IMG/VR virus record: IMGVR_UViG_3300042934_000547
Coordinates: 124,001 to 188,000 of that record
Reading direction: 5' to 3' (one strand)
DNA length: 64,000 nt
Below are positions 1,981-58,455 of this stretch, piece by piece. The number at the start of each line of letters is the position of its first letter. The first letter of the stretch is position 1. The notes below the pieces were generated by a model that worked only from the letters and a program-made list of their open reading frames with translations, did not search any database and had not been told where the DNA came from. A program made the translations under genes and the position numbers.

Positions 1981-2036
1981 GCCATCTAATGAATGAGATT
2001 GTGATGGACTTTAGATTATTTTATTTTCTCATTCAT
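1981..2036 (-). promoter_or_regulatory. Predicted 5'-leader pseudoknot, copy A
   Basis: Sense strand: S1 ATGAATGAGA/TCTCATTCAT, S2 CCATC/GATGG, AAATAA after the S1 5' strand, GGAGG 3 nt after S2. Confidence 0.7.
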
Positions 2037-2039
2037 ATC

Positions 2040-2072
2040 TATAATATACATTTGAAAATCTTAACTTTTACA
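2040..2072 (-). promoter_or_regulatory. Bipartite early-type promoter TGTAAA-N18-TATATTATA
   Basis: + TATAATATA 2040-2048, TTTACA 2067-2072. Confidence 0.8.
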
Positions 2073-3190: not shown

Positions 3191-3248
3191 CCTATTTGTA
3201 TTCTATACAAACGGATTTTAAATAGGATTTCGAATTATTTATCCGTTC
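3191..3248 (-). promoter_or_regulatory. Predicted 5'-leader pseudoknot, copy B
   Basis: S1 AACGGAT/ATCCGTT, S2 CCTAT(TT)/(AA)ATAGG, AAATAA loop, inserted hairpin TTGTA-tagaa-TACAA. Confidence 0.7.
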
Positions 3249-3253
3249 ATAGT

Positions 3254-3286
3254 TATAATATATATTTATAATTCCTAATTTTTACA
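3254..3286 (-). promoter_or_regulatory. Bipartite early-type promoter TGTAAA-N18-TATATTATA
   Basis: + TATAATATA 3254-3262, TTTACA 3281-3286. Confidence 0.8.
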
Positions 3287-18063: not shown

Positions 18064-18095
18064 CTAATGTTTATCCCCCTTAAAATGTGGTATTA

Positions 18096-18119: not shown

Positions 18120-18153
18120 AAATTTTCAGATGAGCTTGAAAGGAGCTATAACT

Positions 18154-19122: not shown

Positions 19123-19155
19123 TCCTTCCTCTATTAAATAAAGGAGGGAATAAAA

Positions 19156-21915
19156 ATGTATGAACCAGTTTTATGGTATGATTTTAGTGAATTGATACAA
19201 GGTACCATTAGTATTACCGATAAATCGAATAATGGACATAATGGAAGTATTTCTGGAAATTATGCAGTAGGTGATGGGTTTATTATACCTAATCAAGATA
19301 TGGTAATTTCCCATGATAATTTTCTATTCAATACTATAAATCAACCATGGTCGATAAGTCTTCATTGTCTGATTAATACTCTTCCTAATGATAAACCGAT
19401 ACTCGATATATTTGACGGGATTTATTTATCATTACTTGACCGTGGAGTAATTAATATAAATAAATTTTTCTTTGCCGAATTTGCATACATTAATTCCAAA
19501 ATCATCACACTTTGTTATGATGGGGTTGCAAGTTTCAAAATATTCGTTGATGGGTTCAAATTACCTATTAATATAAATGACTCTGAAATTAATCTAAATG
19601 GATTAATTATAAATCCATCGGTTAAATTGATGAATTTGGGTTCTGGAAATTTGTTTTCATATAAATTATATGATTCATATCTTCCAGATTACATAATCGT
19701 CGGAGAGCATAAAGGAATAATCGTTCAGAATAACTTTGTTGAACCAACTGAACTTGGTACTGAAAAGTTATTTCTAAGTGATGAATTAAAAGGGATGATT
19801 GATAATATCAAATCATCCTTTAATGATACCTATATATCAAGACACAATGCTCAGTATCTACCTAAACTTGCAACTACGTTTATTAGATTGGGAGATGAGT
19901 TTAAATATGAAGGTAAAAAATATAAAACAACTAAACCTTACCTATATACAGTAGAAAATACAGCTCTATTCAAAAAAGAGGATAAGATATCTAAATTTAG
20001 GAAAACACACCAAGAATTATTAAATCTTGGTGTTAAATTAGCTGATATACTCGTTATCAGTGATGGTGAAATATTTCCTATGAGTAATGCTAATCTTATA
20101 TTTACATACGATGGTAAATATCTCTATGTAGAATCAGATATCAAAATGGATCAATGGTTATTGTTTTATAATAAAAACTTTTCTTTAAGCAATATCATTG
20201 AGCCTAATAGCATAAAGGTAGGTAGTAAATATCTTGTACTCAATGACATCACAGTTAGAGAAATACATAGTGATGTGTATATGATGGAAAAATATGATAA
20301 TATAGAGGAAAATAGTTTCTATTATCTTAATCCAACAACTGGTATATTTGAATATGCTAAACCTGAAAAGTTTCAAAGTGGTATAAATGTATTTTTCAAG
20401 TTCTTTAAAGTTGGCGATACAATATTATTATTAACACCAAAATATCCTGAAGTATCTAACGTCAACAAGAAATTTGATTTACTTAACATTCCACAAATCA
20501 GATTACCTAATATGAATTACATCAATTCTGATGGAACTAAAATCAATATACCATTATCAGAATTAGACAAATCCAAACGAGAATTATGGTTTATACATCA
20601 TATTCTTAAATCCAATTTAAGATTATTGGAAGATTATCAATTAGAAGATGTCAATGTGAAGTATTCTCGTGTATCTGGAAATAGAATAAAGACCTTAGCT
20701 AAAAACAATAAATATACATTTATTCCACCTATTGTTAAAGATAAGAAAAGCTACGTCTTAGTATTTAGAAATGGATTGTATGATACGTCGATTATTAAAG
20801 ATAAGAATAAATTTATCATAGATACAACAACAGTTAACTTATCTGACAATTTCGATATAATGACATTTGAATATCTTGATACAAGACGGACATCGATTAT
20901 TTATGATCATTCAATTGGTATTAATAAGACGTTATTAGACGGTAAGATAAGAATATTTGCTAGAAGTGATAGAACTGGTGTCTATAATAGAACCTTAGAT
21001 TATCATCTATTCGAGATATTCTATGATGATAGTAATGTTGATAAAATATTCTTATCACCATTGTATGATGGCGATGAAATAATAATTACGACTGATAGAT
21101 ACTTTAATCATCATCAATTCACTATTGATAGTAATGACAGTTGTGTACTAACATGGAACTCCGACGAACATCTTGGACATAAATTGAAAACGTTGTTATT
21201 TATAAATGGAGTATGGATACCTCACTCACAATATGAAATAACCAATCCAACCGATTACAATTTAACAACCAGATCATACTTAACAATTTATGGATTTCCT
21301 AAGAGCACTACTGGAATTTTCAAAATAGATTTATTTTGTACTCCCGTATCATTTATTCCATTAGTAGAAAATGAAACACTAGATGTGAATAATTTACTAT
21401 ATACAAGGAGTTCATTATTCACTCTACCATTTAATATTCAAAAAAATATCATATTTGCTGATGGTAAAATTATATCTGAAGAGTTAGTAACTCATATATC
21501 GTCTGATATAATTCATATAGATAATAATGATACTAATAATCTCTTTATGATTGGTATAGATTATGATAGAGATGAATTCATAACTAATCTGTCTGAAATC
21601 ATCGATAATATATGGGATACAACTGTAAGAACTTATTCCGAAAATGATATAATGACAATATTCAATCTTAAATATAAACCTGATATTAATAAGGAAGGTA
21701 TATTATACAAACTGAATAAACGCTTAGTTGATTTAGCTAACGTTTTTAAATTCGGATTAAGAAATATGACTGGAACAATAAATGTTGGGGAAATTCAGCA
21801 GTTACCGGGATTCAATTATGCTAAGACTGCTAAGGGGGAACTCTATCTAGATAGCAATTTAGACTTATATGAGGACCCACAAATACCAAATTATGCAACA
21901 GAAAGTGAGGTGTGA
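19156..21915 (+). CDS. Large virion/baseplate protein with N-terminal LamG/ConA-like domain
   Basis: VLWYDFS...ITDKSNNGHNG...LCYDG..FKIFVDG; repeated L(F)INGxW/Y beta motifs. Confidence 0.65.
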   Translation: MYEPVLWYDFSELIQGTISITDKSNNGHNGSISGNYAVGDGFIIPNQDMVISHDNFLFNTINQPWSISLHCLINTLPNDKPILDIFDGIYLSLLDRGVININKFFFAEFAYINSKIITLCYDGVASFKIFVDGFKLPININDSEINLNGLIINPSVKLMNLGSGNLFSYKLYDSYLPDYIIVGEHKGIIVQNNFVEPTELGTEKLFLSDELKGMIDNIKSSFNDTYISRHNAQYLPKLATTFIRLGDEFKYEGKKYKTTKPYLYTVENTALFKKEDKISKFRKTHQELLNLGVKLADILVISDGEIFPMSNANLIFTYDGKYLYVESDIKMDQWLLFYNKNFSLSNIIEPNSIKVGSKYLVLNDITVREIHSDVYMMEKYDNIEENSFYYLNPTTGIFEYAKPEKFQSGINVFFKFFKVGDTILLLTPKYPEVSNVNKKFDLLNIPQIRLPNMNYINSDGTKINIPLSELDKSKRELWFIHHILKSNLRLLEDYQLEDVNVKYSRVSGNRIKTLAKNNKYTFIPPIVKDKKSYVLVFRNGLYDTSIIKDKNKFIIDTTTVNLSDNFDIMTFEYLDTRRTSIIYDHSIGINKTLLDGKIRIFARSDRTGVYNRTLDYHLFEIFYDDSNVDKIFLSPLYDGDEIIITTDRYFNHHQFTIDSNDSCVLTWNSDEHLGHKLKTLLFINGVWIPHSQYEITNPTDYNLTTRSYLTIYGFPKSTTGIFKIDLFCTPVSFIPLVENETLDVNNLLYTRSSLFTLPFNIQKNIIFADGKIISEELVTHISSDIIHIDNNDTNNLFMIGIDYDRDEFITNLSEIIDNIWDTTVRTYSENDIMTIFNLKYKPDINKEGILYKLNKRLVDLANVFKFGLRNMTGTINVGEIQQLPGFNYAKTAKGELYLDSNLDLYEDPQIPNYATESEV

Positions 21916-21918
21916 TAA

Positions 21919-23142
21919 ATGTTTAATAAATTATTACAGATGATAATACCCAATCCTTCAACAAGATTAGTTTTTAATGATTTAGCATATAGTGTTGAAA
22001 ATATAAACAAAGCAAAACCGGGTGAACGTTTAATTGACTATGAAAATGGTCATATCTATATAAAGAAACTTGACGGTATTGGAATAGTTTGTAAGACACT
22101 TGAAATGGAAACTAGAGTGGGAATGATCGATGTTGATGCTGAAGGTAATCTCACATATAAAGACCATATTGTATGGCACGCAGGAATCTTCAACCCAGAT
22201 GATTATTTAAAACGTTCTGGTAATGTGATGACTGGTGCTATTGAATTTGTACCAGAAAGTGATGTCGATTTTACATTTATGAAATTAACATCTGCTATCG
22301 GAGACAGTTGGAAATTTGATTATCTGGATACTGCTAAAGGTAATTCAATAAAAATAACATCAATAGATACAAATAAATCTCTCGAATTGAGTCACAATGG
22401 TATATTGAGTGCTGATGAACTAAAAACTAATCTATCTAAGGTTTGGTTTGGTTCTAATAGATTTGAATACAATTATACTGATAATTTGATGGAATTGTTT
22501 ATTGGTGATAGTAATACTGGTAAGGTTCGATACGCTAAAGAAAGTGAAATTTTACATGCTGATACTGTAATATTATCCCCATCTGGAGATAATAAATTGA
22601 ATGTTGGTGTGAAGAATACTCTTAATAAAATTTTTATTGGTCATACACCAATTTCTGGATACAATAATCCATCTATATATAGTTTTGGCGATGGAACGGT
22701 ATTCAGAGATATAGAAGCTGGAAATGTAAAGTCATACGGTAATATCAATATCGTTGGTCTAGGTAATCACATGTTTTTACCTAATAATTCCTTTATCAAA
22801 GGTTCATTAAATGATGGTAGTATGTCGATATCATTGATTGGAATGAATATAGATAATAAGGTGACAATTAGTGATTCAGAGGCTGAAATATTTTTTAATA
22901 GCAACATGTTGTCATTACCAGTAGCAGGGGTTACTTCTCTATCGAAGAATACGACAAATATCGAAATTAGTGATAATGATACTCTTGTAGATATTAAAAA
23001 CAATGACGTCAGTATGGCTAAATTTAATAAAACAGGTATTATGGATGTTTTATCTGGTATTAATTTTAACGGTATTCTTATTAAGAAAAATACCAGTGAA
23101 AATACTTTGGATATTATATTCCAACCAATACCTATAAATTGA
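21919..23142 (+). CDS. Tail fibre / receptor-binding-like protein
   Basis: VWHAGIFNP..YLKRSGNVMTG tail-fibre motif; beta/Gly-rich. Confidence 0.65.
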   Translation: MFNKLLQMIIPNPSTRLVFNDLAYSVENINKAKPGERLIDYENGHIYIKKLDGIGIVCKTLEMETRVGMIDVDAEGNLTYKDHIVWHAGIFNPDDYLKRSGNVMTGAIEFVPESDVDFTFMKLTSAIGDSWKFDYLDTAKGNSIKITSIDTNKSLELSHNGILSADELKTNLSKVWFGSNRFEYNYTDNLMELFIGDSNTGKVRYAKESEILHADTVILSPSGDNKLNVGVKNTLNKIFIGHTPISGYNNPSIYSFGDGTVFRDIEAGNVKSYGNINIVGLGNHMFLPNNSFIKGSLNDGSMSISLIGMNIDNKVTISDSEAEIFFNSNMLSLPVAGVTSLSKNTTNIEISDNDTLVDIKNNDVSMAKFNKTGIMDVLSGINFNGILIKKNTSENTLDIIFQPIPIN

Positions 23143-23164
23143 TAAGGAGAGATTTCTCCTTATC
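23141..23164 (+). terminator. Intrinsic terminator
   Basis: GATAAGGAGA-gatt-TCTCCTTATC followed by a T-run. Confidence 0.75.
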
Positions 23165-23186
23165 ATTTTTTTAGGAGGAAATAAAT

Positions 23187-23921
23187 ATGAATACGCAACT
23201 AAGAAATGGGTTAGTATGTTGGTATGATTTTGTTCGAGATCGTACTGGACGTAGTGATATATATGATTTCAGCGGTAATGGACATGATTTAATCATTGAA
23301 AATCCACAGAATGTTGTATGGCTTGGTAATGATAATATAGTAATCACTGATGATGGTGCGTTATCTTCTGAATTTAATATACCGCTAACTGCTATGTCTA
23401 CGTTCACAATAAGTTATAGGGTTTATTCAGATGCGAACCCTTATGATGTTTTTGGTATACAGATAAAGGGGATAGATGATGAAGTCGTATCTACATTCAA
23501 TTATATGAAAATTAGCGAAATGCATTATGTTGCATTTTCATTTGACCTATCCACCGAAACAGGTAAAGCTTATTTAAATGGCTCTTTGAAGAGGACGTAC
23601 GCAGTACCTCAGAGTGTGTATGTTGGTAAAACACTATCGAAATTACTAATTGCAGGGGGACCATCACCCACTCAAATCACATATGGTGATATAAGAATAT
23701 ATGACAGACAATTATCAGATGAAGAAATATATAATTTAGTTTATAGAAAAAGTTTTATTGATGAGAGTGGTCGGGTTTATTCTAAATCATTTAATACTGA
23801 CCAAGTTATTACACCAAAAATAAAAGAAACTGGTTTGGATTATCCTATTTTCGATGGAACCAAATTAGGTGTAAATCTCTCTGAAACAACACTGGGGTGT
23901 AATGATATCGAGGGCATATAA
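23187..23921 (+). CDS. LamG/ConA-like domain protein
   Basis: GLVCWYDF, DFSGNGHD, HYVAFSFD, AYLNG, DIRIYDRQLSDEEI. Confidence 0.8.
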   Translation: MNTQLRNGLVCWYDFVRDRTGRSDIYDFSGNGHDLIIENPQNVVWLGNDNIVITDDGALSSEFNIPLTAMSTFTISYRVYSDANPYDVFGIQIKGIDDEVVSTFNYMKISEMHYVAFSFDLSTETGKAYLNGSLKRTYAVPQSVYVGKTLSKLLIAGGPSPTQITYGDIRIYDRQLSDEEIYNLVYRKSFIDESGRVYSKSFNTDQVITPKIKETGLDYPIFDGTKLGVNLSETTLGCNDIEGI

Positions 23922-23928
23922 AGTATTA

Positions 23929-23940
23929 AACACAATTATA
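23929..23940 (+). promoter_or_regulatory. Late-type promoter AACA-N6-TA
   Basis: AACACAATTATA upstream of the RBS of 23965. Confidence 0.6.
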
Positions 23941-23964
23941 ATCTAAGGAAAGGAGAATGATTGA

Positions 23965-24300
23965 ATGACTAATGAAATCATTTCGGCACTATTCCAAGCT
24001 ATAATGACAGGACTTGTTGGACTAGTAATAGCTTGGGTAATAAAAAGACCGATGGATAAATATCTAGCTAAAAGGGATCAAAAAGATATAGCGTTCTCTA
24101 AATATATAGCTACCTATTATTCATCCATTCTCAATAAAGTAGATACCTTGGGTGAGATTGTTATAATACAAGCATGTGCCACCAGTTGTGATAATGCAGA
24201 GATTATGAAATTGGTATCTGAATACAAACAACTGGACAAAGAATTTAGAGAAGATACTGCTAAAAAGATGGCAAGTTTTTCTCAGTTTGACTATAATTAA
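23965..24300 (+). CDS. Membrane protein, holin-like candidate
   Basis: Single N-terminal TM helix; own late-type promoter and terminator. Confidence 0.5.
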   Translation: MTNEIISALFQAIMTGLVGLVIAWVIKRPMDKYLAKRDQKDIAFSKYIATYYSSILNKVDTLGEIVIIQACATSCDNAEIMKLVSEYKQLDKEFREDTAKKMASFSQFDYN

Positions 24301-28607: not shown

Positions 28608-30107
28608 CTATGCATTTACTTTATTATAGAATTCAATTAATGAACGTTTGTATTCTGGATCATATTTATCTCTACCCAAATTGATAAAGTTGTTTAAGTT
28701 AACTAATGTATTCTTTGTTGGTAGGTAGTTAACGTATAACAATCCATCATTTCTGTTTATAATCATAGCTCTTCTTGGATTATAAACTAATAATGCTGTT
28801 TGATAGAACTTGTCGTTGATTATCAACTTAACGTTTAATACGTCACCGTCAAAGTCTGCTTGTAGTGATGGCAATATATCAAGTGGAACACCCATTGTGA
28901 AATTATAGCATATTCCAATAACATGCATTTGAATCATACTACCATATTCCAATGTAGGATTTCTGTTTATCATTACTGGAATTCCAAATGGGTATGAGTT
29001 GATAATACTATTAATGATACTTATCAATTCATAATTCTCTTTAAGTCTTCCAACACTCCATATCATGTAAGCATCATTAATACTGATACTTCTTCTATGT
29101 GCAATTATATTTATAATTTTCTGTTGCAACAAATCACACAATGTATAATATGATAGAGTTATTTGGTCAACCTTAAGTGAAGCATCTGGTTTGATAACAT
29201 TTCTTGCTGTAAAGTTATATTTACCACCATATGCTCTCCTTATCAATCCAGTTTTACCTGACAAAATTTCTTCAATATCTGCATATACGTTCATGAACTC
29301 ATCTTGAAGTTTTTGAAGATATTCAGGTATTGATGTTTTATATAGAGTTAATTTATTCCTGTTTATTCTAGCTGTATACATAGCCATATTATTAAAATTA
29401 CCATTGATATCATAATATTCTAATTGTATACCAGAGGTTTTTAATAATCTTAATAATGTAGTATAAACAGGTATACAGCTTGTAAATATTAAGTCTCTAT
29501 TCTTTATGATTTCTTCATATGCATCCTGTTTACTTTGGGTATTAGCCATTTTCTTATAAAATGTAATTATTTCATCGAATCGATTGATGAATTCATATAT
29601 CCCGATTCTAAAGAATGGTTCTTTATCTGGATCTGGAGTCTCTACCGGAATCTCAATTCCATCTGAGTTAAAGTTTTCATCTAGATTCATCATATTATTA
29701 AATGCTTTTTGACCAATAAAACTTTGTATAGTCTTATACATTATTGGATGAATTACTTTATATCCATGCTGTATTACCAACCATCCCGTATAAGCAAAAT
29801 TATCGTCAACAAATTTAACTTTAGTTTTACATTTCGGGCACAGTATTCCTTCATTACTACGTGAACGTAAATTACCACATTCACATTTGTGTCGATCGCC
29901 ATTTGGACTAATATCATCAACACCTCTACCATATCGACTAGAGAATATTCCATCTGGGTCTTTTAATGCTTTTTTGATACCTTGGGCACCAGTAATTATA
30001 AATCCGTTGTCTGTTTCTAAGTCTCGTTTACATTCTTCTTCAAAATTGATTTTTACCAATCTAGATTGGTATTCAATTTCGTTACTATGTCCGTAATCAT
30101 TATACAT
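28608..30107 (-). CDS. Phage multisubunit RNA polymerase beta-prime, N-terminal catalytic fragment (probably non-virion RNAP)
   Basis: GIFS, Zn finger CECG..CPKC, GKTGLIR, NRNPTL, ADFDGD catalytic loop; TATATTATA at 30188-30196. Confidence 0.92.
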   Translation of the reverse strand: MYNDYGHSNEIEYQSRLVKINFEEECKRDLETDNGFIITGAQGIKKALKDPDGIFSSRYGRGVDDISPNGDRHKCECGNLRSRSNEGILCPKCKTKVKFVDDNFAYTGWLVIQHGYKVIHPIMYKTIQSFIGQKAFNNMMNLDENFNSDGIEIPVETPDPDKEPFFRIGIYEFINRFDEIITFYKKMANTQSKQDAYEEIIKNRDLIFTSCIPVYTTLLRLLKTSGIQLEYYDINGNFNNMAMYTARINRNKLTLYKTSIPEYLQKLQDEFMNVYADIEEILSGKTGLIRRAYGGKYNFTARNVIKPDASLKVDQITLSYYTLCDLLQQKIINIIAHRRSISINDAYMIWSVGRLKENYELISIINSIINSYPFGIPVMINRNPTLEYGSMIQMHVIGICYNFTMGVPLDILPSLQADFDGDVLNVKLIINDKFYQTALLVYNPRRAMIINRNDGLLYVNYLPTKNTLVNLNNFINLGRDKYDPEYKRSLIEFYNKVNA

Positions 30108-35899: not shown

Positions 35900-35912
35900 A
35901 AAAAAAAATAAA

Positions 35913-35934
35913 GTGGAACTCGTTTGAGTTCCAC
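35913..35934. terminator. Bidirectional terminator
   Basis: GTGGAACTC-gttt-GAGTTCCAC flanked by A and T runs. Confidence 0.8.
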
Positions 35935-35938
35935 CATT

Positions 35939-36397
35939 TTATTCTTGATTTGCATTTATTAAGGTAACCTTTGTTTGACTCACAAATTTATTGTGTTTAT
36001 TTATACAATCACCCAATTGAAGTCTAATCTTTGGGGTTAGAATCAAATGTATATTTTCCTCATTATATACAATACTTATTCTATGTAAGAGTACAGGTGA
36101 TATATTATTTACGATTTGGGTTTTAACCTCATCCAATATTTCAACTTCCTGTTCATCCTTAATAACTGCTCGGTTATAATATATGAAGAGAAATTCTTCA
36201 ATCGTTTCTCTTATAAAAGCATTGAATAAAAGTATATCATCACCAACGCCTTCATAATTAAACTGGGCTAATTCATGATCTCTTTGTAATGAAGCAATTC
36301 TAAATTTGTTAATCTGATTTACGTACAATATAGCCACTATCAATAAACCGACGAGTGTAACCCATATTATGCATAATAAAGTTAAAATTAAATTCAT
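35939..36397 (-). CDS. Membrane-anchored hypothetical protein
   Basis: N-terminal TM helix. Confidence 0.65.
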   Translation of the reverse strand: MNLILTLLCIIWVTLVGLLIVAILYVNQINKFRIASLQRDHELAQFNYEGVGDDILLFNAFIRETIEEFLFIYYNRAVIKDEQEVEILDEVKTQIVNNISPVLLHRISIVYNEENIHLILTPKIRLQLGDCINKHNKFVSQTKVTLINANQE

Positions 36398-36408
36398 ACT
36401 ATCACATC

Positions 36409-36858
36409 CTATTTACGTATTTTACACCATAATACAATTACATAAATGATTGAAACTAAAACTACACAAACCGTAAATATCACCGAAAACATACCATACA
36501 ATACCAATGGTTCTAAACCACTACCAACAATAAGTTCCGATGTTAATTGGTATTGTGCACTTGCCATTGCAACACATGTTGATACAAAGCCAAGTACCAC
36601 AGAAATCCACATCATTGCATTAATCTTAGATGCTGCATATCTGTATTTAATATTGTTAGATTCTTTATCTGAATAAGTATTAACTGTCTTACAATTTTCT
36701 TTTTGGGTCAACGATGGTAATTCTATATTACCTGTTGATTCTGATAGTAACTCATTTATTCCATTTAGCATACTATCATAAGCAGCTCTTAAACTGTTAT
36801 AGTCTTCCACTGATACATATTTTTGTACTTTAACGTTTTCTTGTTCAACTGAACTCAT
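36409..36858 (-). CDS. Early two-TM membrane protein
   Basis: Two C-terminal TM helices; GGAGG RBS; behind a pseudoknot leader. Confidence 0.7.
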   Translation of the reverse strand: MSSVEQENVKVQKYVSVEDYNSLRAAYDSMLNGINELLSESTGNIELPSLTQKENCKTVNTYSDKESNNIKYRYAASKINAMMWISVVLGFVSTCVAMASAQYQLTSELIVGSGLEPLVLYGMFSVIFTVCVVLVSIIYVIVLWCKIRK

Positions 36859-36878
36859 TTTAAACCTCCAAATTACAC

Positions 36879-36957
36879 CTCACTTCTTTATAGAAGAATA
36901 GTTACGTGAGTTATATATCCAACCAAGGATATATTTCGATTATATTATTTACTATTC
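36879..36957 (-). promoter_or_regulatory. Predicted 5'-leader pseudoknot, copy C
   Basis: S1 GAATAGT/ACTATTC, S2 CTCAC/GTGAG, AAATAA loop, two inserted hairpins. Confidence 0.75.
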
Positions 36958-36962
36958 AATTC

Positions 36963-36995
36963 TATAATATATATTTAAAAATACTAATTTTTACA
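36963..36995 (-). promoter_or_regulatory. Bipartite early-type promoter TGTAAA-N18-TATATTATA
   Basis: + TATAATATA 36963-36971, TTTACA 36990-36995. Confidence 0.8.
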
Positions 36996-37005
36996 TCTGT
37001 TATAA

Positions 37006-37251
37006 TTATGGGTATGGACTCAATCTTGGTGGACGCATGTTTGGCTTGCATAATGGTTCACCATATTGATTATTGATTATAGTTTTAAGTGCCTTAATTT
37101 GTCCTTCATAATATGCCTTCATAGCATTATATTCTTCAAGTGTTACAGTTTTAGTTTGTCTGTTTTTAGATTTAAATCCCTGTGTGTTTATCATAACTTT
37201 ATCTATTTCTTCTTGTAAACTAGGAATTGCTGGTTCATTAAACATATCCAT
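37006..37251 (-). CDS. Small hypothetical protein
   Basis: GAGGA RBS; coiled-coil motif shared with 36409..36858. Confidence 0.65.
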   Translation of the reverse strand: MDMFNEPAIPSLQEEIDKVMINTQGFKSKNRQTKTVTLEEYNAMKAYYEGQIKALKTIINNQYGEPLCKPNMRPPRLSPYP

Positions 37252-37260
37252 TCTTCCTCT

Positions 37261-38019
37261 CTAATAATATATTTTTGACAGAAACTTATTTAATTCTGTT
37301 AGTATCTTCTTATTATAACCAATTTTAATATTATTAACATCATCGCAAGTATTTACACCATACTTGTTATATATATTAAATTTGCTGGTATGATTAAGTT
37401 CTCTATAATAATTCACATTCAAACTTCTATTACTATATTGCTGATAAAAGAATCGTGAATTGACTATAGCTTGTGCTACATTACCCGTCATCACTAAGTA
37501 ATATATATGACATATAAAATCTAACATATAATCTTTATGTAATTCGAGAAATGTATCTTTTATACCCTTGATATCAAGTTTTTCTGTATCAGCCATAATA
37601 TCATATTGATAATACGTCTCTAATGCTCCAATCCTATTAAATAGATTATATCTGTTTTTCTCAATAAAATTAATGTTATCGAATTGTGTAACCATAGGTT
37701 TTCGATTTACCAGAAACACAGCATCATTCTTTACCGATAGTATGTCATCAGGTAGTATGTTATTTATTGAAATGAAGTTATCAACTACTTCTGTAAATCC
37801 ACTTGACAATGCTTCTGATAGCTCCTTATTATTTTGAATCAATAAACCAACCTTACGATTACGTTCTTCTTTGGGTAATATCTTTAATGCATCATACAAA
37901 TTATCTTCTATCAATCCATATCGTTTCATTACATTGATATTACCTTGTTGTATATCATATTCATAAATAAATTTATTAACAATGAATTCATAATTTGGAT
38001 TAATATAAAATTTGCCCAT
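37261..38019 (-). CDS. Minimal DNA-polymerase-palm-like protein
   Basis: Motif A-like YEYDIQQGN and motif C-like ILSVKNDAVF; 252 aa, no exonuclease domain. Confidence 0.55.
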   Translation of the reverse strand: MGKFYINPNYEFIVNKFIYEYDIQQGNINVMKRYGLIEDNLYDALKILPKEERNRKVGLLIQNNKELSEALSSGFTEVVDNFISINNILPDDILSVKNDAVFLVNRKPMVTQFDNINFIEKNRYNLFNRIGALETYYQYDIMADTEKLDIKGIKDTFLELHKDYMLDFICHIYYLVMTGNVAQAIVNSRFFYQQYSNRSLNVNYYRELNHTSKFNIYNKYGVNTCDDVNNIKIGYNKKILTELNKFLSKIYY

Positions 38020-38438
38020 TATACTCGCCTTTCATCAGCCACACTAATATCAATACCATGAGATCTACATATTTTACTAAGGCATATATAAGACATAAAA
38101 CTGTGTATATCGTTTTCAACGATAATAGCCCTTTGATCTTTGATTAAATCATCAATAGTGTATGATATACAATCCCAGATACTTTGGTTTCGTCTTTCAT
38201 AAACTATTAATTCTCCCGTGGTACTGGAAATTATTGCCCCTAGAACTATAGCCATTTTCATTTGATTCTGAAATTTAATATCATCATCAACCGACGGTTT
38301 TACAATTATATCAAATATTTCCCTAGAAAATAAATAATCGTCATCTGTTATGCAATTATCTAATATCCTAATAAATTTCTCAGTATCTAAGTCATAAATT
38401 TCCGAGTCGTTTGATAATATAATTCTTAGACTAGACAT
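38019..38438 (-). CDS. Hypothetical protein
   Basis: Coupled ORF in the operon. Confidence 0.6.
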   Translation of the reverse strand: MSSLRIILSNDSEIYDLDTEKFIRILDNCITDDDYLFSREIFDIIVKPSVDDDIKFQNQMKMAIVLGAIISSTTGELIVYERRNQSIWDCISYTIDDLIKDQRAIIVENDIHSFMSYICLSKICRSHGIDISVADERRV

Positions 38439-46385: not shown

Positions 46386-47207
46386 TTAATGATTATGGTT
46401 ACATCCACACGATTGTTCACCAGTATGAACATGACCGCAATTACAGTCACGAGGTTCTCTAGTCTGAATTTGTGGATTTCTTATAATCGGACTACCTCCA
46501 ATAATGTAATTAATATATGTGGTTGTAAATAACAAAGTTGGATGATCATTACCACCCACAGTCAAAGTCATTTTTGTCATAAGATCATTTTCATCAAATT
46601 CATATTGGATATGTTTAGCCCCTGTAACAGATTCTTCCAGCACTTGACCTAAATCATTATCACGATATATCATGTGCGAAAGTTCATTACCATCTTCACC
46701 GATAACTATTTCACTCTTTTTGTTTGGTGAATTTGGATAAAACTCGCCTGTTACCTTAAACCCATCAATTTCAAATGAATATTTATCACCATCGATTTTA
46801 ATATCATATAACGTTTCAATCAAAGCTTCTTTATTTTCTGAATCTTGAGAATCTACCGAATGTTTAATCATTCTTATTGGTCTTTCTAATTCATTGAATT
46901 CAGTATCCATATAATTTAAATAAAGACTACCACTTCTAGTTGTTTCAGTAAATTTGCTTTTTGTAAGTTTGTTATTTTCGTCATAAAAATTTTCTGTTAT
47001 AGAACTCGGTTCAATTTTTCTAATTATTTTATCAGTATCTTGTAAATAACTAATTGTTTTTTGATTACCTACATAAATAGACGTTTCATCATTAATACGA
47101 ACAATTCTTCCGAGTTCATCAGTAAACATCAATGCGTGAAAGCATTCTCCTTCGTTTACAACCTTTCTTGTCACTAATATCTTTTTATTTGCTAAATTTT
47201 CATTCAT
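46386..47207 (-). CDS. Stand-alone YD-repeat-like early protein with His/Cys-rich tail
   Basis: TDELGRIVR, FYDENNKL, YEFDENDL; tail CNCGHVH...CGCNHNH; start moved to MNEN. Confidence 0.7.
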   Translation of the reverse strand: MNENLANKKILVTRKVVNEGECFHALMFTDELGRIVRINDETSIYVGNQKTISYLQDTDKIIRKIEPSSITENFYDENNKLTKSKFTETTRSGSLYLNYMDTEFNELERPIRMIKHSVDSQDSENKEALIETLYDIKIDGDKYSFEIDGFKVTGEFYPNSPNKKSEIVIGEDGNELSHMIYRDNDLGQVLEESVTGAKHIQYEFDENDLMTKMTLTVGGNDHPTLLFTTTYINYIIGGSPIIRNPQIQTREPRDCNCGHVHTGEQSCGCNHNH

Positions 47208-47225: not shown

Positions 47226-47273
47226 CCTCATTTTAGGATAAGATATGAGGTCTTACACATTATTTTCTTATCC
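47226..47273 (-). promoter_or_regulatory. Predicted 5'-leader pseudoknot, copy D
   Basis: S1 GGATAAGA/TCTTATCC, S2 CCTCAT/ATGAGG, AAATAA loop. Confidence 0.75.
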
Positions 47274-47278
47274 ATATC

Positions 47279-47311
47279 TATAATATACATTTGAAATAAG
47301 TTATATTTACA
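47279..47311 (-). promoter_or_regulatory. Bipartite early-type promoter TGTAAA-N18-TATATTATA
   Basis: + TATAATATA 47279-47287, TTTACA 47306-47311. Confidence 0.8.
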
Positions 47312-47340: not shown

Positions 47341-48030
47341 TTAATTAAAAATTCGGTTATAAAATGTAGTGGTGGTTTCTTCTGTATTATTATCTTTATG
47401 AGACACTTTCTTAGTTAATAATCCATTTTCGTCATATGTATATTTAGTTAACTTTCCATATTGACATGTTGAGTACCATTGATTTAATGGATTATCAATG
47501 TAAAAATTATGTATAACAACAGTATCTGTTTTTATTACCGTTGCTTTATATTCTTTCTTACGTGAAGAATTTGGGAAATAAGTAAAGTCCAATTTTCTGC
47601 CATTTATGATAAAAGTGTATGTATCATTAACTATAGTAGCATCCATGATTGTTTTTTCCTTTTTGGGATCTATATCACCAAAAATAGAATCAGTACTACC
47701 CTTAGTGATCTGTATTATTCTCCCTAACTCATCATATGAAAATATCCATATAAAAAGGTTTACACCATCTACGTCTTTTGTATACTCCCTACCTACTTCC
47801 AATTTACCGTTTTCATCATAGACATATTCGCCACACATTGTAGAACTTATTTTAATGATTTTGTCAGTATCATTGAAGTATTCGATATTTTCTGACGATC
47901 TCGTATACTTCTTTTCCCTCCTTACAATTCTACCGAGTCTATCGGTAAACATCAGTGAATGAAATTGTTCCTCACCATTATTCTTTCTCTTTGTTACCAA
48001 AATTACTTTCTTTTCCAAATTTTTGTTCAT
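47341..48030 (-). CDS. Stand-alone YD-repeat early protein (paralog of 46386..47207)
   Basis: FHSLMFTDRLGRIVR, YVYDENGKL, YDELGRI, YTYDENGLL; TATATTATA at 48087-48095. Confidence 0.75.
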   Translation of the reverse strand: MNKNLEKKVILVTKRKNNGEEQFHSLMFTDRLGRIVRREKKYTRSSENIEYFNDTDKIIKISSTMCGEYVYDENGKLEVGREYTKDVDGVNLFIWIFSYDELGRIIQITKGSTDSIFGDIDPKKEKTIMDATIVNDTYTFIINGRKLDFTYFPNSSRKKEYKATVIKTDTVVIHNFYIDNPLNQWYSTCQYGKLTKYTYDENGLLTKKVSHKDNNTEETTTTFYNRIFN

Positions 48031-48125
48031 CTTGTTTATTCTCCTTTTTAGGTTTTTAAATAAAAATCTATGTTTTTATTCATATCTATAATATATACTT
48101 GAAAAAATAACTAGAGAAAAAAGAA

Positions 48126-48149
48126 GGAGGATGAAATTAATCATCCTCC
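48126..48149 (-). terminator. Intrinsic terminator after dut
   Basis: GGAGGATGA-aattaa-TCATCCTCC. Confidence 0.8.
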
Positions 48150-48157
48150 ATTATTAT

Positions 48158-48685
48158 TTACTTTCCAGTTGAGCCAAAGCCCTTCTCACCACGAGATGAT
48201 GGGGATAATTGTTTTTTAATTACCAGCTTATCAGGTTTAATTCCAGTAGATATAACTAGTTGAGCGATTCTATCACCGATAGAAACTATATATTCACTTT
48301 CACCTAAATTGAATAATACTACCTGAATTTCTCCTCGATAAGATTCATCTATTGTTCCCGGACTATTAAGAACAAATAAATCATGCTTACGAGCTAGTCC
48401 ACTTCTACTACGAACATCGGCGTATAATTCTTCCCAAGGGTTTAATCTGATATTAATAGACGATAAATCAATCCAAGTTCCAGTTGGTATGATTCGTTTT
48501 GATTTAGGTGGAATAGTAACATTTATAGTGCTTTGTAAATCCATTCCTATAGAACCTTCATCTTCGAATTTAGGTAAGAATTTTTCATCTGTAACCTTTA
48601 CATCCATTGTGATTTTTGGTATATTTGGTAGTGCTGACAGTGTACCAGTAAAACACATTTCTGAATTAACTATTAAATTATCCAT
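48158..48685 (-). CDS. dut: Trimeric dUTPase
   Basis: All five motifs: GMDL, RSRSGLA, GTIDESYRGEI, GDRIAQL, RGEKGFGSTG. Confidence 0.95.
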   Translation of the reverse strand: MDNLIVNSEMCFTGTLSALPNIPKITMDVKVTDEKFLPKFEDEGSIGMDLQSTINVTIPPKSKRIIPTGTWIDLSSINIRLNPWEELYADVRSRSGLARKHDLFVLNSPGTIDESYRGEIQVVLFNLGESEYIVSIGDRIAQLVISTGIKPDKLVIKKQLSPSSRGEKGFGSTGK

Positions 48686-53647: not shown

Positions 53648-54496
53648 TTATTTTTCCTTTATTATGTATTCTAAATTATTCAGTTTAAGTTTATTAGCAT
53701 AACTAAATAATTCAGTGGCAAATATATCATCACATTGTTTATGCCAATTTATTTTTTCTTCATCTGTCATTTCCAACAGCGTACAAAATTCATCATATCT
53801 ATCTATATATAGATATACCTTAGATTTATTATCCCATACATCCAATGTTTTATCTAATCTCACTTTACGAACAATAAATCGTGCCAGTGTTTTTAATACA
53901 TTGATATATAATTCTTTATTGAAACGTCCTGATTCTTCAAATAACTGAAATACATTTACAGTAAATTTATTGTATCTAATTCTATCAAGACTAATATATC
54001 CACTGTATATATATTTAAATAAATCGTATCGCTCATTTATCTGTATTGGATAACTAAAATTATTCATATTAATATTGTGAGTACATTTCGATACCCAATC
54101 ATTAAATTTCTTTGAATTAATATTAGTATGTAATATCTCAGTTACCGTATAACTAGGTTGTATATTGATGAAATTACTTAATGGTATTTCATCTACACAA
54201 TTCACAGGAACATAGGAATTTGCTCGGTTATTATTATAACAGACGTAATACTTAAGAGCCATAGGTTCATATTTAATGAGTAATCGTTCAATAGCCTCCT
54301 GTATCTCACAGCTTTGAACTATATCCCTAGAACCAAATTCTTTTTTGATTTTTCCAGAGATAGTATAAACTAATGAAACGTCCTCTAGATATTTTTTAGG
54401 ATTGCAAGCCACCAAAACTGAATTTAAAATAATATTGAGTTTTTCTTTATTAAATGGTTCTACCGCCCCGTTCCGTTTAATAATTAAAGTAATCAT
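53648..54496 (-). CDS. ATP-cone protein with degenerate RNR-like C-terminus
   Basis: IIKRNGAVEPFNKEKL...EIQEAIERLL; AACA-N6-TA at 54533-54544. Confidence 0.75.
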   Translation of the reverse strand: MITLIIKRNGAVEPFNKEKLNIILNSVLVACNPKKYLEDVSLVYTISGKIKKEFGSRDIVQSCEIQEAIERLLIKYEPMALKYYVCYNNNRANSYVPVNCVDEIPLSNFINIQPSYTVTEILHTNINSKKFNDWVSKCTHNINMNNFSYPIQINERYDLFKYIYSGYISLDRIRYNKFTVNVFQLFEESGRFNKELYINVLKTLARFIVRKVRLDKTLDVWDNKSKVYLYIDRYDEFCTLLEMTDEEKINWHKQCDDIFATELFSYANKLKLNNLEYIIKEK

Positions 54497-54654
54497 ATTG
54501 TAAGTCTCCCTTCTAATGCCTATTAATTAAATTATCTTTATGTTTGTTTTTTCGTTAAATATTCTACAGTTACATAAATCAATATCTCCGTGAAATTTAT
54601 TATTTTATACCATTGCAACATTATAATAGTTGTGGAAGACTAAAGGAGAATATG

Positions 54655-55464
54655 ATGATGGAAAATAAAATAGATGTACAAGGATATAAGTATTATTCAA
54701 TAGAAGATAATATTATTAGAATCTCTAAAGATAAAAATGTTATTAATGATAAGTGGACTAAACTGAAAATGGATGCATTAATGGCTTTTCATATAATATC
54801 GAATGATGATGGAGCCAAATATATTATGGTTGCTATGTACAATAATGGTGACTATAAAAATCCTGTTCTGATATTTGTTTCAAATTTTATAAATGAATGG
54901 GACGCAAATATTGGTAATAGAATACTAGGGAAAACATTCAACAGGTATACTGGAATTGATGAAAATTTATTTAAGGTTATAAAAATAGAATATTCCGAAT
55001 ATGTTGCTATATATAAGGAAGATTCATTTAAAAATATTTATGACCAACTTATTAATAAAGATAAGTTTAATGAAGTCCTTAAAGCATTTAATTCTGCTTT
55101 TATAGAAATGGGTAATCTTAATATATCTCTACCTGATAATCTTTATGATTATATGAAACACGGTGCATTTGATTATGACTACGATAATGAATTAGGCATT
55201 GAGCAACTTGAATTTGACCTTGAAATAGATAATGAGAGACTAATCAACCAATTAGACTTAGAAACATTTCTCGGTCATAAATTAATTCAACCTGTTATAG
55301 TCAAATATAATCGAATTATAGTTTTAGAAGATATCAAAAAAGACTATGGATTATTCCGTGACGCCACTGATACATTATATCTAGTTACGTTTATTCGTGG
55401 AGATATAATAGATGATGAAAACCTAGATTTAATCGAGTGGAATAAGAGCTTTGGAGTGAGGTAA
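54655..55464 (+). CDS. Hypothetical protein
   Basis: AAGGAG RBS; AACA-N6-TA at 54617-54628. Confidence 0.65.
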   Translation: MMENKIDVQGYKYYSIEDNIIRISKDKNVINDKWTKLKMDALMAFHIISNDDGAKYIMVAMYNNGDYKNPVLIFVSNFINEWDANIGNRILGKTFNRYTGIDENLFKVIKIEYSEYVAIYKEDSFKNIYDQLINKDKFNEVLKAFNSAFIEMGNLNISLPDNLYDYMKHGAFDYDYDNELGIEQLEFDLEIDNERLINQLDLETFLGHKLIQPVIVKYNRIIVLEDIKKDYGLFRDATDTLYLVTFIRGDIIDDENLDLIEWNKSFGVR

Positions 55465-55535
55465 TAAAATATATTATAAATATATATTATAACAATGAAT
55501 TAAACAAATTTAAAATTTTAGGAGGAACAACAAAG

Positions 55536-56643: not shown

Positions 56644-56649
56644 CAATTA

Positions 56650-56679
56650 ATGGTGGAACCTGTAATCGGGTTCCATCAT
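56650..56679 (+). terminator. Intrinsic terminator
   Basis: ATGGTGGAACC...GGTTCCATCAT followed by a T-run. Confidence 0.8.
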
Positions 56680-56719
56680 TTTTTTTTGTATTATGACAAT
56701 ATTCGCATCAAGATAAGAA

Positions 56720-56752
56720 TGTAAAAATTAACTTTTTTGAATATATATTATA
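56720..56752 (+). promoter_or_regulatory. Bipartite early-type promoter TGTAAA-N18-TATATTATA
   Basis: TGTAAA 56720-56725, TATATTATA 56744-56752. Confidence 0.8.
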
Positions 56753-56757
56753 GATAT

Positions 56758-56839
56758 GAATAGTAAATAATAAATAGTAGTATATTCTTAGTTGAATATA
56801 TAAACTCACATAACTATTCTTCTTTCATAAGAAGTGAGT
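56758..56839 (+). promoter_or_regulatory. Predicted 5'-leader pseudoknot, copy E
   Basis: S1 GAATAGT 56758-64 / ACTATTC 56813-19; S2 ACTCAC 56804-09 / GTGAGT 56834-39; AAATAA loop. Confidence 0.75.
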
Positions 56840-56855
56840 AATAGAGGAGAATGAA

Positions 56856-56990
56856 ATGAAAGTAGCAATATTTATTTTAGGAGTAATGATTTTAACAGCA
56901 ATAATACCAGCACCATATAATGTAGTTGCAGCTGTTGCATTTGGATTTATATTATCTGGTATAGATTTAAAGAAGAAAAATGATAATTAA
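56856..56990 (+). CDS. Small two-TM early protein (44 aa; not in ORF track)
   Basis: MKVAIFILGVMILTAIIPAPYNVVAAVAFGFILSGIDLKKKNDN; GAGGAG RBS. Confidence 0.75.
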   Translation: MKVAIFILGVMILTAIIPAPYNVVAAVAFGFILSGIDLKKKNDN

Positions 56991-57068
56991 ATATGAATAA
57001 TAGAACGATAAAATAATATAGCGGGAAATAAGAATGCTATATTATTTTTTATCTAAAAGGAGATAAAG

Positions 57069-57254
57069 ATGAATACAAAGAAGAGTAATACAATATTTTT
57101 ATTAACAGTTGTATTGAGTTTGTGTTATAGTATGCTTATATTTGGGGCAATACAACTTGCTAAAATATACGGTAAATTACCATTATTTATAGTAGGAATG
57201 GTTATGTATTTAATTGGAAAATTTATATATTTTAAAAGGATGAAAAATGACTGA
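57069..57254 (+). CDS. Small two-TM protein
   Basis: Two hydrophobic helices; AAGGAG RBS. Confidence 0.7.
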   Translation: MNTKKSNTIFLLTVVLSLCYSMLIFGAIQLAKIYGKLPLFIVGMVMYLIGKFIYFKRMKND

Positions 57255-57393
57255 AATAATTTCATTGGCAATAATAATTATCTTTATCTTAAAATGCATA
57301 ACGACCGATCCACATGCTGTAATATACAGAGTTATTGGATTGGTATTCATTGTATGTTTTTTGTTATTAACTAGTATATTTGGAGGTTATTAA
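57247..57393 (+). CDS. Small two-TM protein (48 aa; not in ORF track)
   Basis: MTEIISLAIIIIFILKC...VIGLVFIVCFLLLTSIFGGY; coupled to genes on both sides. Confidence 0.7.
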   Translation: MTEIISLAIIIIFILKCITTDPHAVIYRVIGLVFIVCFLLLTSIFGGY

Positions 57394-58443: not shown

Positions 58444-58455
58444 AGGAGTTAGAAT

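What the first reader, a model, noticed from the sequence alone, without database searches (positions are those of the whole stretch)
36879..36995. Leader C and leader E are homologous cassettes 20 kb apart on opposite strands
Seen: 36879-36957 (minus) and 56758-56839 (plus) share GAATAGTAAATAATA...ACTCAC.TAACTATTCTTCT...AGAAGTGAG. The inserted hairpin shows a compensatory change (TATATCC-ttggtt-GGATATA versus TATATTC-ttagtt-GAATATA). The downstream genes are unrelated membrane proteins. Inference: promoter plus leader moves as a portable expression cassette under structural selection.
Basis: seen in the sequence. Interest (0 to 1): 0.65.

Follow-up and report, generated by a model that had tools for sequence, protein, structure and literature searches.

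The report
Jumbo-phage early promoter pseudoknot leader family
The two look-alike stretches are real and belong to a family of at least twelve early-gene control modules in a giant phage, each a virion-polymerase-type promoter followed by an RNA leader whose first bases fold into a knot-like structure that probably shields the message from decay.

Summary
Window 36879-36995 (minus) and 56720-56839 (plus) are about 86% identical over 106 nt, and the hairpin carries a true C-G to U-A compensatory change.

The window lies in a 232-kb AR9/phiR1-37-like jumbo phage from a soil metagenome. The shared 5' half matches the experimentally defined AR9 early (virion RNA polymerase) promoter, AAATATATATTAT-N6-G(+1). 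The transcript is therefore inferred to start at the G of GAATAGT.

The leader is more than one hairpin:
- Nucleotides +1 to +7 pair with ACTATTC downstream (S1).
- CTCAC inside that loop pairs with GTGAG beyond it (S2), which is a pseudoknot topology.
- Hairpins P2 and P3 are inserted in the loops.

Three more copies elsewhere in the genome keep all four helices through compensatory changes: 97% of cells are paired and 16 of 23 pairs change on both sides.

Seven further leaders have the same S1/S2 plan without P2. All twelve, and almost no other early promoter, carry TGYAAW at exactly -38.

Most likely function (inferred, not shown): a 5'-terminal structure that protects early mRNAs from 5'-end-dependent decay, placed next to a free ribosome-binding site.

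The "portable cassette" idea is partly supported. The modules were duplicated in front of unrelated genes, but there is no sign of a mobile element.

The parts
36989..36995 (-). Copy C: upstream promoter element TGTAAAA, starting at -38
   Evidence: TGYAAW starts exactly at -38 in all 12 pseudoknot leaders and in only 3-4 of the other 29 motif sites.
36958..36976 (-). Copy C: core early promoter AAATATATATTAT plus a 6-nt spacer (-19 to -1)
   Evidence: Matches the AR9 early (virion RNAP) consensus AAATATATATTAT-N6-G(+1) of PMC5312081. There are 41 strict matches in the genome.
36951..36957 (-). Copy C: inferred transcription start (G at 36957) and S1 5' strand GAATAGT (+1 to +7)
   Evidence: The start is inferred from the AR9 consensus. 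A 7-bp helix is anchored at +1.
36913..36934 (-). Copy C: hairpin P2 (ATATATCC / loop TTGGTT / GGATATAT), inserted in loop L1
   Evidence: Predicted by RNAfold. 100% of cells are paired in 5 paralogs and 5 of 8 pairs change on both sides.
36906..36910 (-). Copy C: S2 5' strand CTCAC, 3 nt upstream of the S1 3' strand
   Evidence: The third copy has CCTGC/GCAGG instead.
36896..36902 (-). Copy C: S1 3' strand ACTATTC (+56 to +62)
   Evidence: It is GCTATTC in the copy whose 5' end is GAATAGC.
36884..36895 (-). Copy C: loop L3 with mini-hairpin P3 (TTCT-ATAA-AGAA)
   Evidence: helix 4 is 100% paired and 2 of 3 pairs change on both sides. It is thermodynamically marginal on its own.
36879..36883 (-). 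Copy C: S2 3' strand GTGAG (pseudoknot closure), 20 nt before the ATG
36856..36869 (-). Copy C: Shine-Dalgarno GGAGG (36865-36869) and ATG (36856-36858), outside the conserved block
35939..36858 (-). Genes driven by C: 149-aa protein (36409-36858) and 152-aa protein (35939-36397). Both have hydrophobic segments and no family match above threshold.
56720..56757 (+). Copy E: promoter, with TGTAAAA at 56720-56726 (-38) and core ATATATTAT at 56743-56751
56758..56839 (+). Copy E leader: S1a 56758-56764; P2 56781-56800; S2a 56804-56809; S1b 56813-56819; L3/P3 56820-56833; S2b 56834-56839
56844..57393 (+). Copy E: Shine-Dalgarno GAGGAG (56844-56849) and three small hydrophobic ORFs (44 aa at 56856-56990, 61 aa at 57069-57254, 48 aa at 57247-57393)
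56652..56690 (+). Intrinsic terminator of the preceding gene, just upstream of cassette E
   Evidence: a GC-rich inverted repeat followed by a T run. E therefore starts its own transcription unit.
1982..2072 (-). Family member without P2: class-I promoter and minimal S1/S2 leader (start 2034; S1 GAATGAGA/TCTCATTC; S2 CCATC/GATGG)
3191..3286 (-). Family member without P2 (start 3248; S1 GAACGGAT/ATCCGTTT; S2 CCTATTT/AAATAGG)
47226..47311 (-). Family member without P2 (start 47273; S1 GGATAAGA/TCTTATCC; S2 CCTCAT/ATGAGG)

Best explanation
C and E are two paralogous copies of a modular early-gene control unit of an AR9-like jumbo phage.

Each unit has two parts:
1. An AR9-type early promoter, AAATATATATTAT-N6-G(+1), presumably read by the phage's virion RNA polymerase. 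It carries an extra TGTAAAA element at -38.
2. An 80-85-nt structured leader.

The leader folds as follows:
- The first 7-8 transcribed bases pair with a complement about 55 nt downstream (S1).
- A C-rich pentamer lying 3 nt before that complement pairs with a purine-rich pentamer after it (S2). This gives a pseudoknot topology.
- A variable hairpin (P2) sits in the first loop and a mini-hairpin (P3) in the last.
- The knot ends 12-23 nt before the start codon and leaves a strong Shine-Dalgarno sequence free.

Shown here: the sequence family, the promoter match, and all four helices by covariation among paralogs.

Inferred: the transcription start; that S1 and S2 form at the same time; and the function. 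I take the function to be burial of the 5' triphosphate end, so that 5'-end-dependent decay enzymes (RppH with RNase J1 or RNase E) cannot start. That would prolong the life of early phage messages while the adjacent ribosome-binding site stays open. This is a 5' stabilizer built as a knot rather than a plain stem-loop.

The units multiplied by duplication in front of unrelated genes.
For: Genome and promoter
- The genome encodes a split RNAP beta'-like subunit and is distantly related to phiR1-37, BpSp and AR9.
- The promoter motif equals the AR9 early consensus, whose G start was mapped by dRNA-seq and primer extension (Table S2).

S1
- 14 of 18 long early leaders have a helix of at least 7 bp that begins at +1. 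Shuffles give a mean of 1.7 and a maximum of 6 in 300.
- Allowing G-U gives 132 bp in total; allowing A-C gives 90. The pairing is therefore on the sense RNA strand.

S2
- The summed score is 191 against a shuffle mean of 155; 0 of 1000 shuffles reach it.
- The geometry is fixed: a 1-4 nt gap to S1b in 12 of 14, and an end 12-23 nt before the ATG in 12 of 14.

The five P2-type paralogs
- 97.4% of cells are paired, against 73.6% when shuffled.
- 16 of 23 pairs change on both sides; slid controls give 32-49%.
- The S2 helix was not part of the model that made the alignment.

Other support
- The -38 element is present in 12 of 12 knot leaders and in 3-4 of the 29 other sites.
- The nearest relative found (IMG/VR contig, RNAP piece 41% identical) also has helices at +1 to +3 in excess (12 of 40 against 4.5 in shuffles) and four S1+S2-like leaders.
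- Established knowledge: 5'-terminal base pairing stabilizes bacterial mRNAs, because RppH, RNase E and RNase J1 need unpaired 5' nucleotides, and Bacillus RppH needs at least 2 (PMC3997798).
Against: - No transcription start, RNA structure or half-life has been measured for this phage.
- No RNA run is on record for it.
- The host is unknown, so its decay machinery is unknown too.
- Single-sequence folding does not single out S1. The MFE z-scores are only -0.9 to -1.3 for C, E and Q, and S1 and S2 each add only 2-8 kcal/mol.
- Some minimal members have a last loop of only 4 nt opposite an 8-bp S1. That is short for a canonical coaxial H-type knot, so S1 and S2 may not always coexist.
- In 8 of 14 cases the helix could formally extend 1-3 bp upstream of +1.
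- AR9 itself shows no enrichment (3 of 20 against 1.5), so this is not a general need of virion-RNAP transcripts.
- A pure stability role does not explain the conserved AAAWAAW at the start of loop 1, or the tight link to the -38 element.
Confidence: 0.5

Rival explanations
1. Translational operator. The shared knot plus the conserved A-rich stretch is the binding site of a phage-encoded RNA-binding protein. That protein would switch a regulon of about twelve early messages on or off together, as T4 RegA or gp32 do.
For: A conserved structure is combined with a conserved single-stranded motif: AAAWAAW opens loop 1 in 12 of 12. The position is fixed, 12-23 nt before the ATG and directly 5' of the Shine-Dalgarno sequence. 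The structure is restricted to one promoter class. The T4 gene 32 operator is also a 5'-terminal pseudoknot (own knowledge).
Against: No candidate binding protein was identified. The stems vary freely in sequence. The Shine-Dalgarno sequence is outside the structure. A-richness is expected for unpaired RNA in a 29% GC genome. The relative G005 uses plain 5' hairpins in the same position, which fits a generic end-protection role better.
Confidence: 0.2
2. Transcription-coupled role. The nascent 5' helix and the -38 element act together on the virion RNA polymerase, in promoter escape, pausing, R-loop avoidance or timing. The RNA fold then matters during synthesis, not afterwards.
For: The -38 DNA element and the leader fold are perfectly coupled (12 of 12). 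The helix starts at the first transcribed base.
Against: S1b lies 33-62 nt downstream, so S1 can only form long after promoter escape. In IMG/VR, many promoters with the -38 element have short or unstructured leaders: only 14 of 45 long ones have S1. The coupling is therefore not obligatory.
Confidence: 0.1
3. Ligand-sensing riboswitch or member of another described RNA family.
For: Pseudoknot folds directly upstream of ribosome-binding sites are typical of small riboswitches.
Against: No Rfam 15 family matches at gathering thresholds over the window, nor up to E = 10 over the leaders. Apart from the A-rich linker there is no conserved core of unpaired nucleotides. The downstream genes are functionally unrelated ORFans. 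The ribosome-binding site is not sequestered: S1b-RBS complementarity is at chance level.
Confidence: 0.03
4. A plain duplicated DNA segment. C and E are alike only because one was copied recently, and the 'structure' is incidental.
For: C and E alone differ at few positions, so one compensatory pair is weak evidence. MFE z-scores are unremarkable.
Against: Three diverged copies (56-70% identical) and seven more distant leaders keep the helices through many double changes and G-U wobbles.
Confidence: 0.04

Closest known systems
Early (virion RNA polymerase) promoters of Bacillus phage AR9 and its relatives (PMC5312081)
   Same: The core is identical, AAATATATATTAT-N6-G(+1). There are tens of copies per genome, in front of early genes of a jumbo phage with split multisubunit RNAP genes.
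   Different: A subclass here has an extra TGYAAW element at exactly -38, which is not part of the AR9 consensus. AR9 leaders are mostly 20-40 nt long and show no excess of 5'-terminal helices. The AR9 paper mentions an uncharacterized 5' UTR motif but no structure.
5' mRNA stabilizers: 5'-terminal stem-loops of E. coli ompA and papA and of the B. subtilis aprE leader; ribosome-binding stabilizers such as ermC and SP82 (reviewed in PMC3997798)
   Same: Base pairing starts at or next to the first nucleotide. A strong ribosome-binding site lies within about 100 nt. The expected effect is a block to RppH, RNase E and RNase J1 entry.
   Different: Here the terminal helix is closed by a long-range partner and locked by a second, crossing helix, rather than being a local hairpin. 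It occurs as a multi-copy family tied to one promoter class. Stabilization has not been measured.
Phage T4 gene 32 mRNA 5' leader pseudoknot (own knowledge, not checked with a tool)
   Same: An H-type pseudoknot at the extreme 5' end of a phage message, followed by an unstructured A/U-rich region and the ribosome-binding site. It was supported by covariation among related phages, and that leader also confers stability.
   Different: T4 has one such leader, on the gene of the protein that binds it (autoregulation). Here twelve leaders precede unrelated genes. The loops are much longer and carry inserted hairpins, and there is no sequence similarity.
Exoribonuclease-resistant RNAs (xrRNA) of flaviviruses and plant viruses
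   Same: A pseudoknotted fold that involves the 5' end and could mechanically resist a 5'-to-3' exonuclease. xrRNAs are cited as also blocking bacterial RNase J1 (papers listed; own knowledge).
   Different: xrRNAs lie inside longer RNAs and stall an enzyme that is already moving. They have a defined ring-like three-way-junction fold with conserved nucleotides. No Rfam match was found here, and a ring topology cannot be tested with these tools.

Membership tests
AR9-type early (virion RNAP) promoter | Consensus AAATATATATTAT, a 6-nt spacer, then G as the start | tested here: met
   C reads AAATATATATTAT-AGAATT-G and E reads GAATATATATTAT-AGATAT-G. There are 41 strict matches in the genome. The consensus is from PMC5312081.
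AR9-type early (virion RNAP) promoter | The genome encodes phage multisubunit RNA polymerase pieces | tested here: met
   ORF 28608-30107 (minus) matches Pfam RNA_pol_Rpb1_2 and the beta'-like subunits of phiR1-37, BpSp and AR9 at 28-29% identity. Only this one subunit was examined.
AR9-type early (virion RNAP) promoter | Transcription early in infection, independent of protein synthesis, starting at the G | not testable with these tools
   No RNA run holds this phage.
H-type RNA pseudoknot | Two helices whose strands interleave (S1a, S2a, S1b, S2b), each supported independently | tested here: met
   S1: 14 of 18 against 1.7 expected. S2: 0 of 1000 shuffles reach the observed score. Both helices covary in the 5-paralog alignment.
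H-type RNA pseudoknot | Both helices form at the same time, with loop lengths able to span the grooves | tested here: inconclusive
   Energies are additive and favourable. However, L3 is only 4 nt opposite an 8-bp S1 in two minimal members, L1 is unusually long (12-46 nt), and L2 is 1-4 nt. No 3D or probing data exist.
5' mRNA stabilizer (5'-terminal stem type) | [quoted passage not shown] | tested here: met
   The helices begin at +1 in 14 of 18 long leaders, given the inferred start. The requirement is from PMC3997798.
5' mRNA stabilizer (5'-terminal stem type) | Lengthens mRNA half-life; the effect is lost when the stem is opened | not testable with these tools
   Needs reporter and half-life experiments.
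Any described RNA family (Rfam 15, including riboswitches and xrRNAs) | Covariance-model match | tested here: not met
   No match at gathering score in the window. None up to E = 10 on copy C. Only chance-level matches on six other leaders.
Mobile DNA cassette (transposable or integron-like) | Terminal repeats, target-site duplication or an associated recombinase | tested here: not met
   The homology block ends at -39 and at the end of S2b. The flanks are unrelated, with no repeats by inspection. The neighbouring ORFs have no recombinase match.
SD-sequestering translational switch | A leader segment complementary to the ribosome-binding site beyond chance | tested here: not met
   S1b-RBS duplex energies sum to -48.8 against -50.6 kcal/mol for shuffles; 302 of 500 shuffles do as well.

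The most novel reading that the evidence does not exclude
The promoter-plus-knot unit is a dedicated self-marking device. The 5'-terminal pseudoknot would act as a bacterial counterpart of a cap or xrRNA, making a chosen set of immediate-early phage messages resistant to the 5'-to-3' decay (host RNase J1/RppH or a phage-induced nuclease) that clears host mRNA during takeover. The -38 element would mark the same genes for the virion polymerase. If so, this is a new RNA family and a new way for phages to tell their own messages from the host's.
Probability: 0.15. Interest if true: 0.8.

Novelty: new variant of a known kind. Interest (0 to 1): 0.55.

Why it matters
- If the fold protects messages, it shows how an uncultured jumbo phage keeps its first transcripts alive. 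It would also extend the 5'-stabilizer idea from simple stem-loops to a modular, knotted, multi-copy element tied to a promoter subclass.
- The motif pair (TGYAAW at -38, the AR9 core, then a helix at +1) gives a sequence-only way to call an early-gene subset in metagenomic jumbo phages.
- The compact, sequence-tolerant fold is a candidate insulating or stabilizing 5' UTR part for expression in AT-rich Gram-positive hosts.
- It is also a candidate new entry for RNA family databases.

Tried and rejected
- **Rfam**: gathering thresholds on the whole window and E up to 10 on the leaders gave nothing real.
- **Megablast** of 20 kb against the phage records: no match.
- **Relatives through the RNAP piece** in IMG/VR by peptide words: none.
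- **Exact leader word** AACTCACRTAACTATTCTTC in IMG/VR: none.
- **Relatives through the neighbouring 252-aa gene** in metagenome contigs: only 28-33% identical proteins without comparable leaders.
- **Covariance model R1** over the window: beyond the known copies, the two best hits are a terminator hairpin (48092-48170) and a coding stretch (62698-62760). Both are spurious.
- **Anti-SD switch** (S1b pairing alternately with S1a or the ribosome-binding site): at chance level, rejected.
- **Single-sequence MFE folding as evidence**: uninformative for S1.
- **AR9 as a second example**: no enrichment.
- **Laid contigs of four runs** on 35900-38100 (2201 letters, within the operators' limit): no RNA evidence and no natural variants inside the leader. 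They gave only a hint that a roughly 93% relative in run X2 lacks contigs over 36010-36940, and a gap in contigs proves nothing.

No alternative genetic code and no large protein search were used.

Full report
**1. The observation**

- Window 36879-36995 on the minus strand (copy C) and 56720-56839 on the plus strand (copy E) are alike from ATGTAAAA to GTGAG.
- blastn-short gives 85.8% identity over 106 nt, E = 4e-16 within the genome.
- The flanks on both sides are unrelated, and the block stops before the Shine-Dalgarno sequence.
- The hairpin differs by a C-G to U-A double change plus one loop change.
- The first genes downstream (149 aa and 44 aa) share no similarity. Both have strongly hydrophobic segments.

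**2. The genome**

The window is part of a single 231,975-bp contig with about 29% GC, whose best DNA holder is a soil metagenome run.
- It encodes a split RNA polymerase beta'-like piece, type II topoisomerase subunits and a DnaB-like helicase.
- The RNAP piece is 28-29% identical to those of Yersinia phage phiR1-37 and Bacillus phages BpSp and AR9.
- It is 41% identical to that of a complete 243,964-bp IMG/VR contig, called G005 here.
- This is therefore a jumbo phage of the group that carries its own multisubunit RNA polymerases.

**3. The 5' half is a known promoter type**

The shared 5' half belongs to a repeat family seen at once by the repeat finder. It has 41 strict copies in the genome, nearly all pointing at an ORF.

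Its core is letter for letter the AR9 early promoter consensus AAATATATATTAT-N6-G(+1). In AR9 that start was mapped by dRNA-seq and primer extension, and the promoter was assigned to the virion RNA polymerase (PMC5312081).

By that homology the transcript starts at the G of GAAT: window 36957 for C and 56758 for E. This is an inference; no RNA data exist for this phage.

**4. The leader is a four-helix fold**

With the start fixed, the first seven bases, GAATAGT, are complementary to ACTATTC at +56 to +62 (helix S1).
- Among the 18 early leaders of 55-200 nt, 14 have a helix of at least 7 bp beginning at +1. Shuffles give a mean of 1.7 and a maximum of 6 in 300.
- The partner changes when the 5' end changes: GAATAGC/GCTATTC, GAATAAGA/TCTTATTC, GGATAAGA/TCTTATCC, GAACGGAT/ATCCGTTT, GAATGAGA/TCTCATTC.
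- Seven helices need G-U pairs and none gains from A-C. The totals are 132 bp with G-U allowed and 90 bp with A-C allowed, so the pairing is in the sense RNA.

A second helix, S2, joins a C-rich word lying 1-4 nt upstream of S1b to a purine-rich word downstream of S1b. It is CTCAC/GTGAG in C, E and one other copy, and CCTGC/GCAGG in another.
- The summed score over the 14 leaders is 191, against a shuffle mean of 155. None of 1000 shuffles reaches it.
- S2 ends 12-23 nt before the ATG in 12 of 14.
- S1 and S2 interleave, which is a pseudoknot topology.

**5. More copies, and the formal count**

A motif scan found a third copy at genome 110525. The helix parse, checked afterwards with a covariance model built from C, E and the third copy, found a fourth at 43571 and a fifth at 221289.

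On the model-made alignment of the five, with S2 added by hand:
- 97.4% of cells form standard pairs, against 73.6% after shuffling.
- 16 of 23 pairs change on both sides.
- No shuffle reaches any measure.
- Sliding the partners by 1-3 columns drops pairing to 32-49%.

S2 was not in the model, so it is not favoured by the alignment. Its only unpaired cells come from the fifth copy, whose 4-bp S2 sits one or two columns out of register.

**6. Seven further leaders**

These have the same S1/S2 plan without P2. Four are minimal and three have a long hairpin in loop 3.
- C and E are the closest pair (83-84% leader identity). The next pair is at 77% and most pairs are at 45-70%.
- All twelve begin loop 1 with AAAWAAW, which I cannot explain.

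**7. A promoter subclass**

All twelve knot leaders have TGYAAW starting exactly at -38. Only 3-4 of the other 29 motif sites do.

The same extended promoter occurs more than 100 times in IMG/VR jumbo contigs. There, only 14 of 45 long leaders have S1, so the link is strong in this phage but not obligatory elsewhere.

In the nearest relative, G005:
- four paralogous -38-type leaders show S1 plus S2-like pairing;
- many core-only promoters are followed by plain hairpins starting at +1 to +3;
- 12 of 40 have at least 7 bp there, against 4.5 in shuffles.

AR9 shows no excess (3 of 20 against 1.5).

**8. Mechanism**

What is shown: the family, the promoter identity and the helices.

What I infer: the fold hides the 5' triphosphate end. 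5'-terminal pairing is an established way to stabilize bacterial mRNAs, because RppH, RNase E and RNase J1 need unpaired 5' nucleotides (PMC3997798).

Three points favour this over the rivals:
- The helices start at the first base.
- A strong, unsequestered Shine-Dalgarno sequence follows.
- The relative uses simple hairpins in the same place.

The main rival is an operator for a phage RNA-binding regulator, suggested by the conserved A-rich stretch and the fixed distance to the ribosome-binding site. A transcription-coupled role is less likely, because S1b is made 33-62 nt after the start. Riboswitch and described-family readings fail the Rfam tests. An anti-SD switch is at chance level.

Caveats:
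- Folding energies alone do not pick out S1.
- Loop 3 is short in two minimal members, so coexistence of S1 and S2 is unproven.
- The host is unknown.

**9. The cassette idea**

The unit of homology is exactly promoter plus knot, without the ribosome-binding site or the gene. It precedes unrelated ORFan genes. That fits duplication of the control module on its own.

There are no terminal repeats, target duplications or recombinases, so it should not be called a mobile element.

In one run a roughly 93% identical relative covers the neighbouring gene, but no contig covers 36010-36940. This is only a hint that the genes behind C vary between strains.

**10. Novelty**

Full-text searches for pseudoknots or 5' structures in jumbo phage leaders found nothing. 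The AR9 paper only notes uncharacterized 5' UTR motifs.

I rate this a new variant of a known kind: a 5' stabilizer-like leader built as a 5'-terminal pseudoknot, multi-copy, and tied to a promoter subclass.

Noticed in passing
window 55497(+), 53208(-), 50957(-), 48081(-), 44738(-), 10924(-), 9030(-); 13128(-): Inferred starts of early promoters that have the core only, with no -38 element. Their leaders are short (16-61 nt) and have no 5' helix. The one at 13128 has TGTAAA at -33 instead of -38 and a 22-nt leader.
   Followed up: partly
window 36935-36950(-), 56765-56780(+) and the other ten leaders: The single-stranded start of loop 1 reads AAAWAAW in all twelve knot leaders. No explanation so far: it could be a protein or ribosome contact, or simply A-rich unpaired RNA.
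   Followed up: no
window 46386-47207(-) and 47341-48030(-): Tandem paralogous genes (39% identical), each with its own early promoter. One has the -38 element and a knot leader; the other is core-only with a 51-nt leader. The second gene has a weak RHS-repeat match.
   Followed up: partly
window 28608-30107(-), 3312-8048(-), 13932-15692(-): A split RNA polymerase beta'-like ORF, GyrA-like and GyrB-like topoisomerase ORFs, and a divergent DnaB-like helicase. These are typical jumbo phage replication and transcription genes.
   Followed up: partly
window ~48125-48160(-) and 56652-56690(+): Clear intrinsic terminators (a GC-rich hairpin plus a T run) directly upstream of early promoters. The first one was picked up as a false hit by the leader model.
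   Followed up: yes
window 8298-8366: A 30-nt direct repeat with two exact copies 39 nt apart and a partial copy between them. Not examined.
   Followed up: no
window 18000-24000 and 54000-60000: Two plus-strand gene islands with reversed GC skew in an otherwise minus-strand region. Cassette E heads part of the second island.
   Followed up: no
window 36010-36940 and 37323-38100 (run X2): A public run of a coded organism, at about 2400-fold depth, holds a relative about 93% identical over the neighbouring gene. Its loose ends match other knot leaders of this genome (those at genome 101147, 113121 and 127248). No contig covers the genes behind cassette C.
   Followed up: partly
loci L183, L185, L216, L217 (IMG/VR contig of 243,964 bp, G005): Four paralogous leaders starting GACATAGATAT behind promoters with the -38 element. 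Each has a helix at +1 of 8 or 11 bp in the two parsed (loci L126 and L097) and a crossing second helix. This is an independent occurrence of the same plan in the nearest relative found.
   Followed up: partly
genome 19375(-)/19395(+), 27682(-)/27702(+), 221289(-)/221294(+) (outside the window): Back-to-back early promoter cores that overlap as near-palindromes, which suggests divergent early transcription from one site.
   Followed up: no
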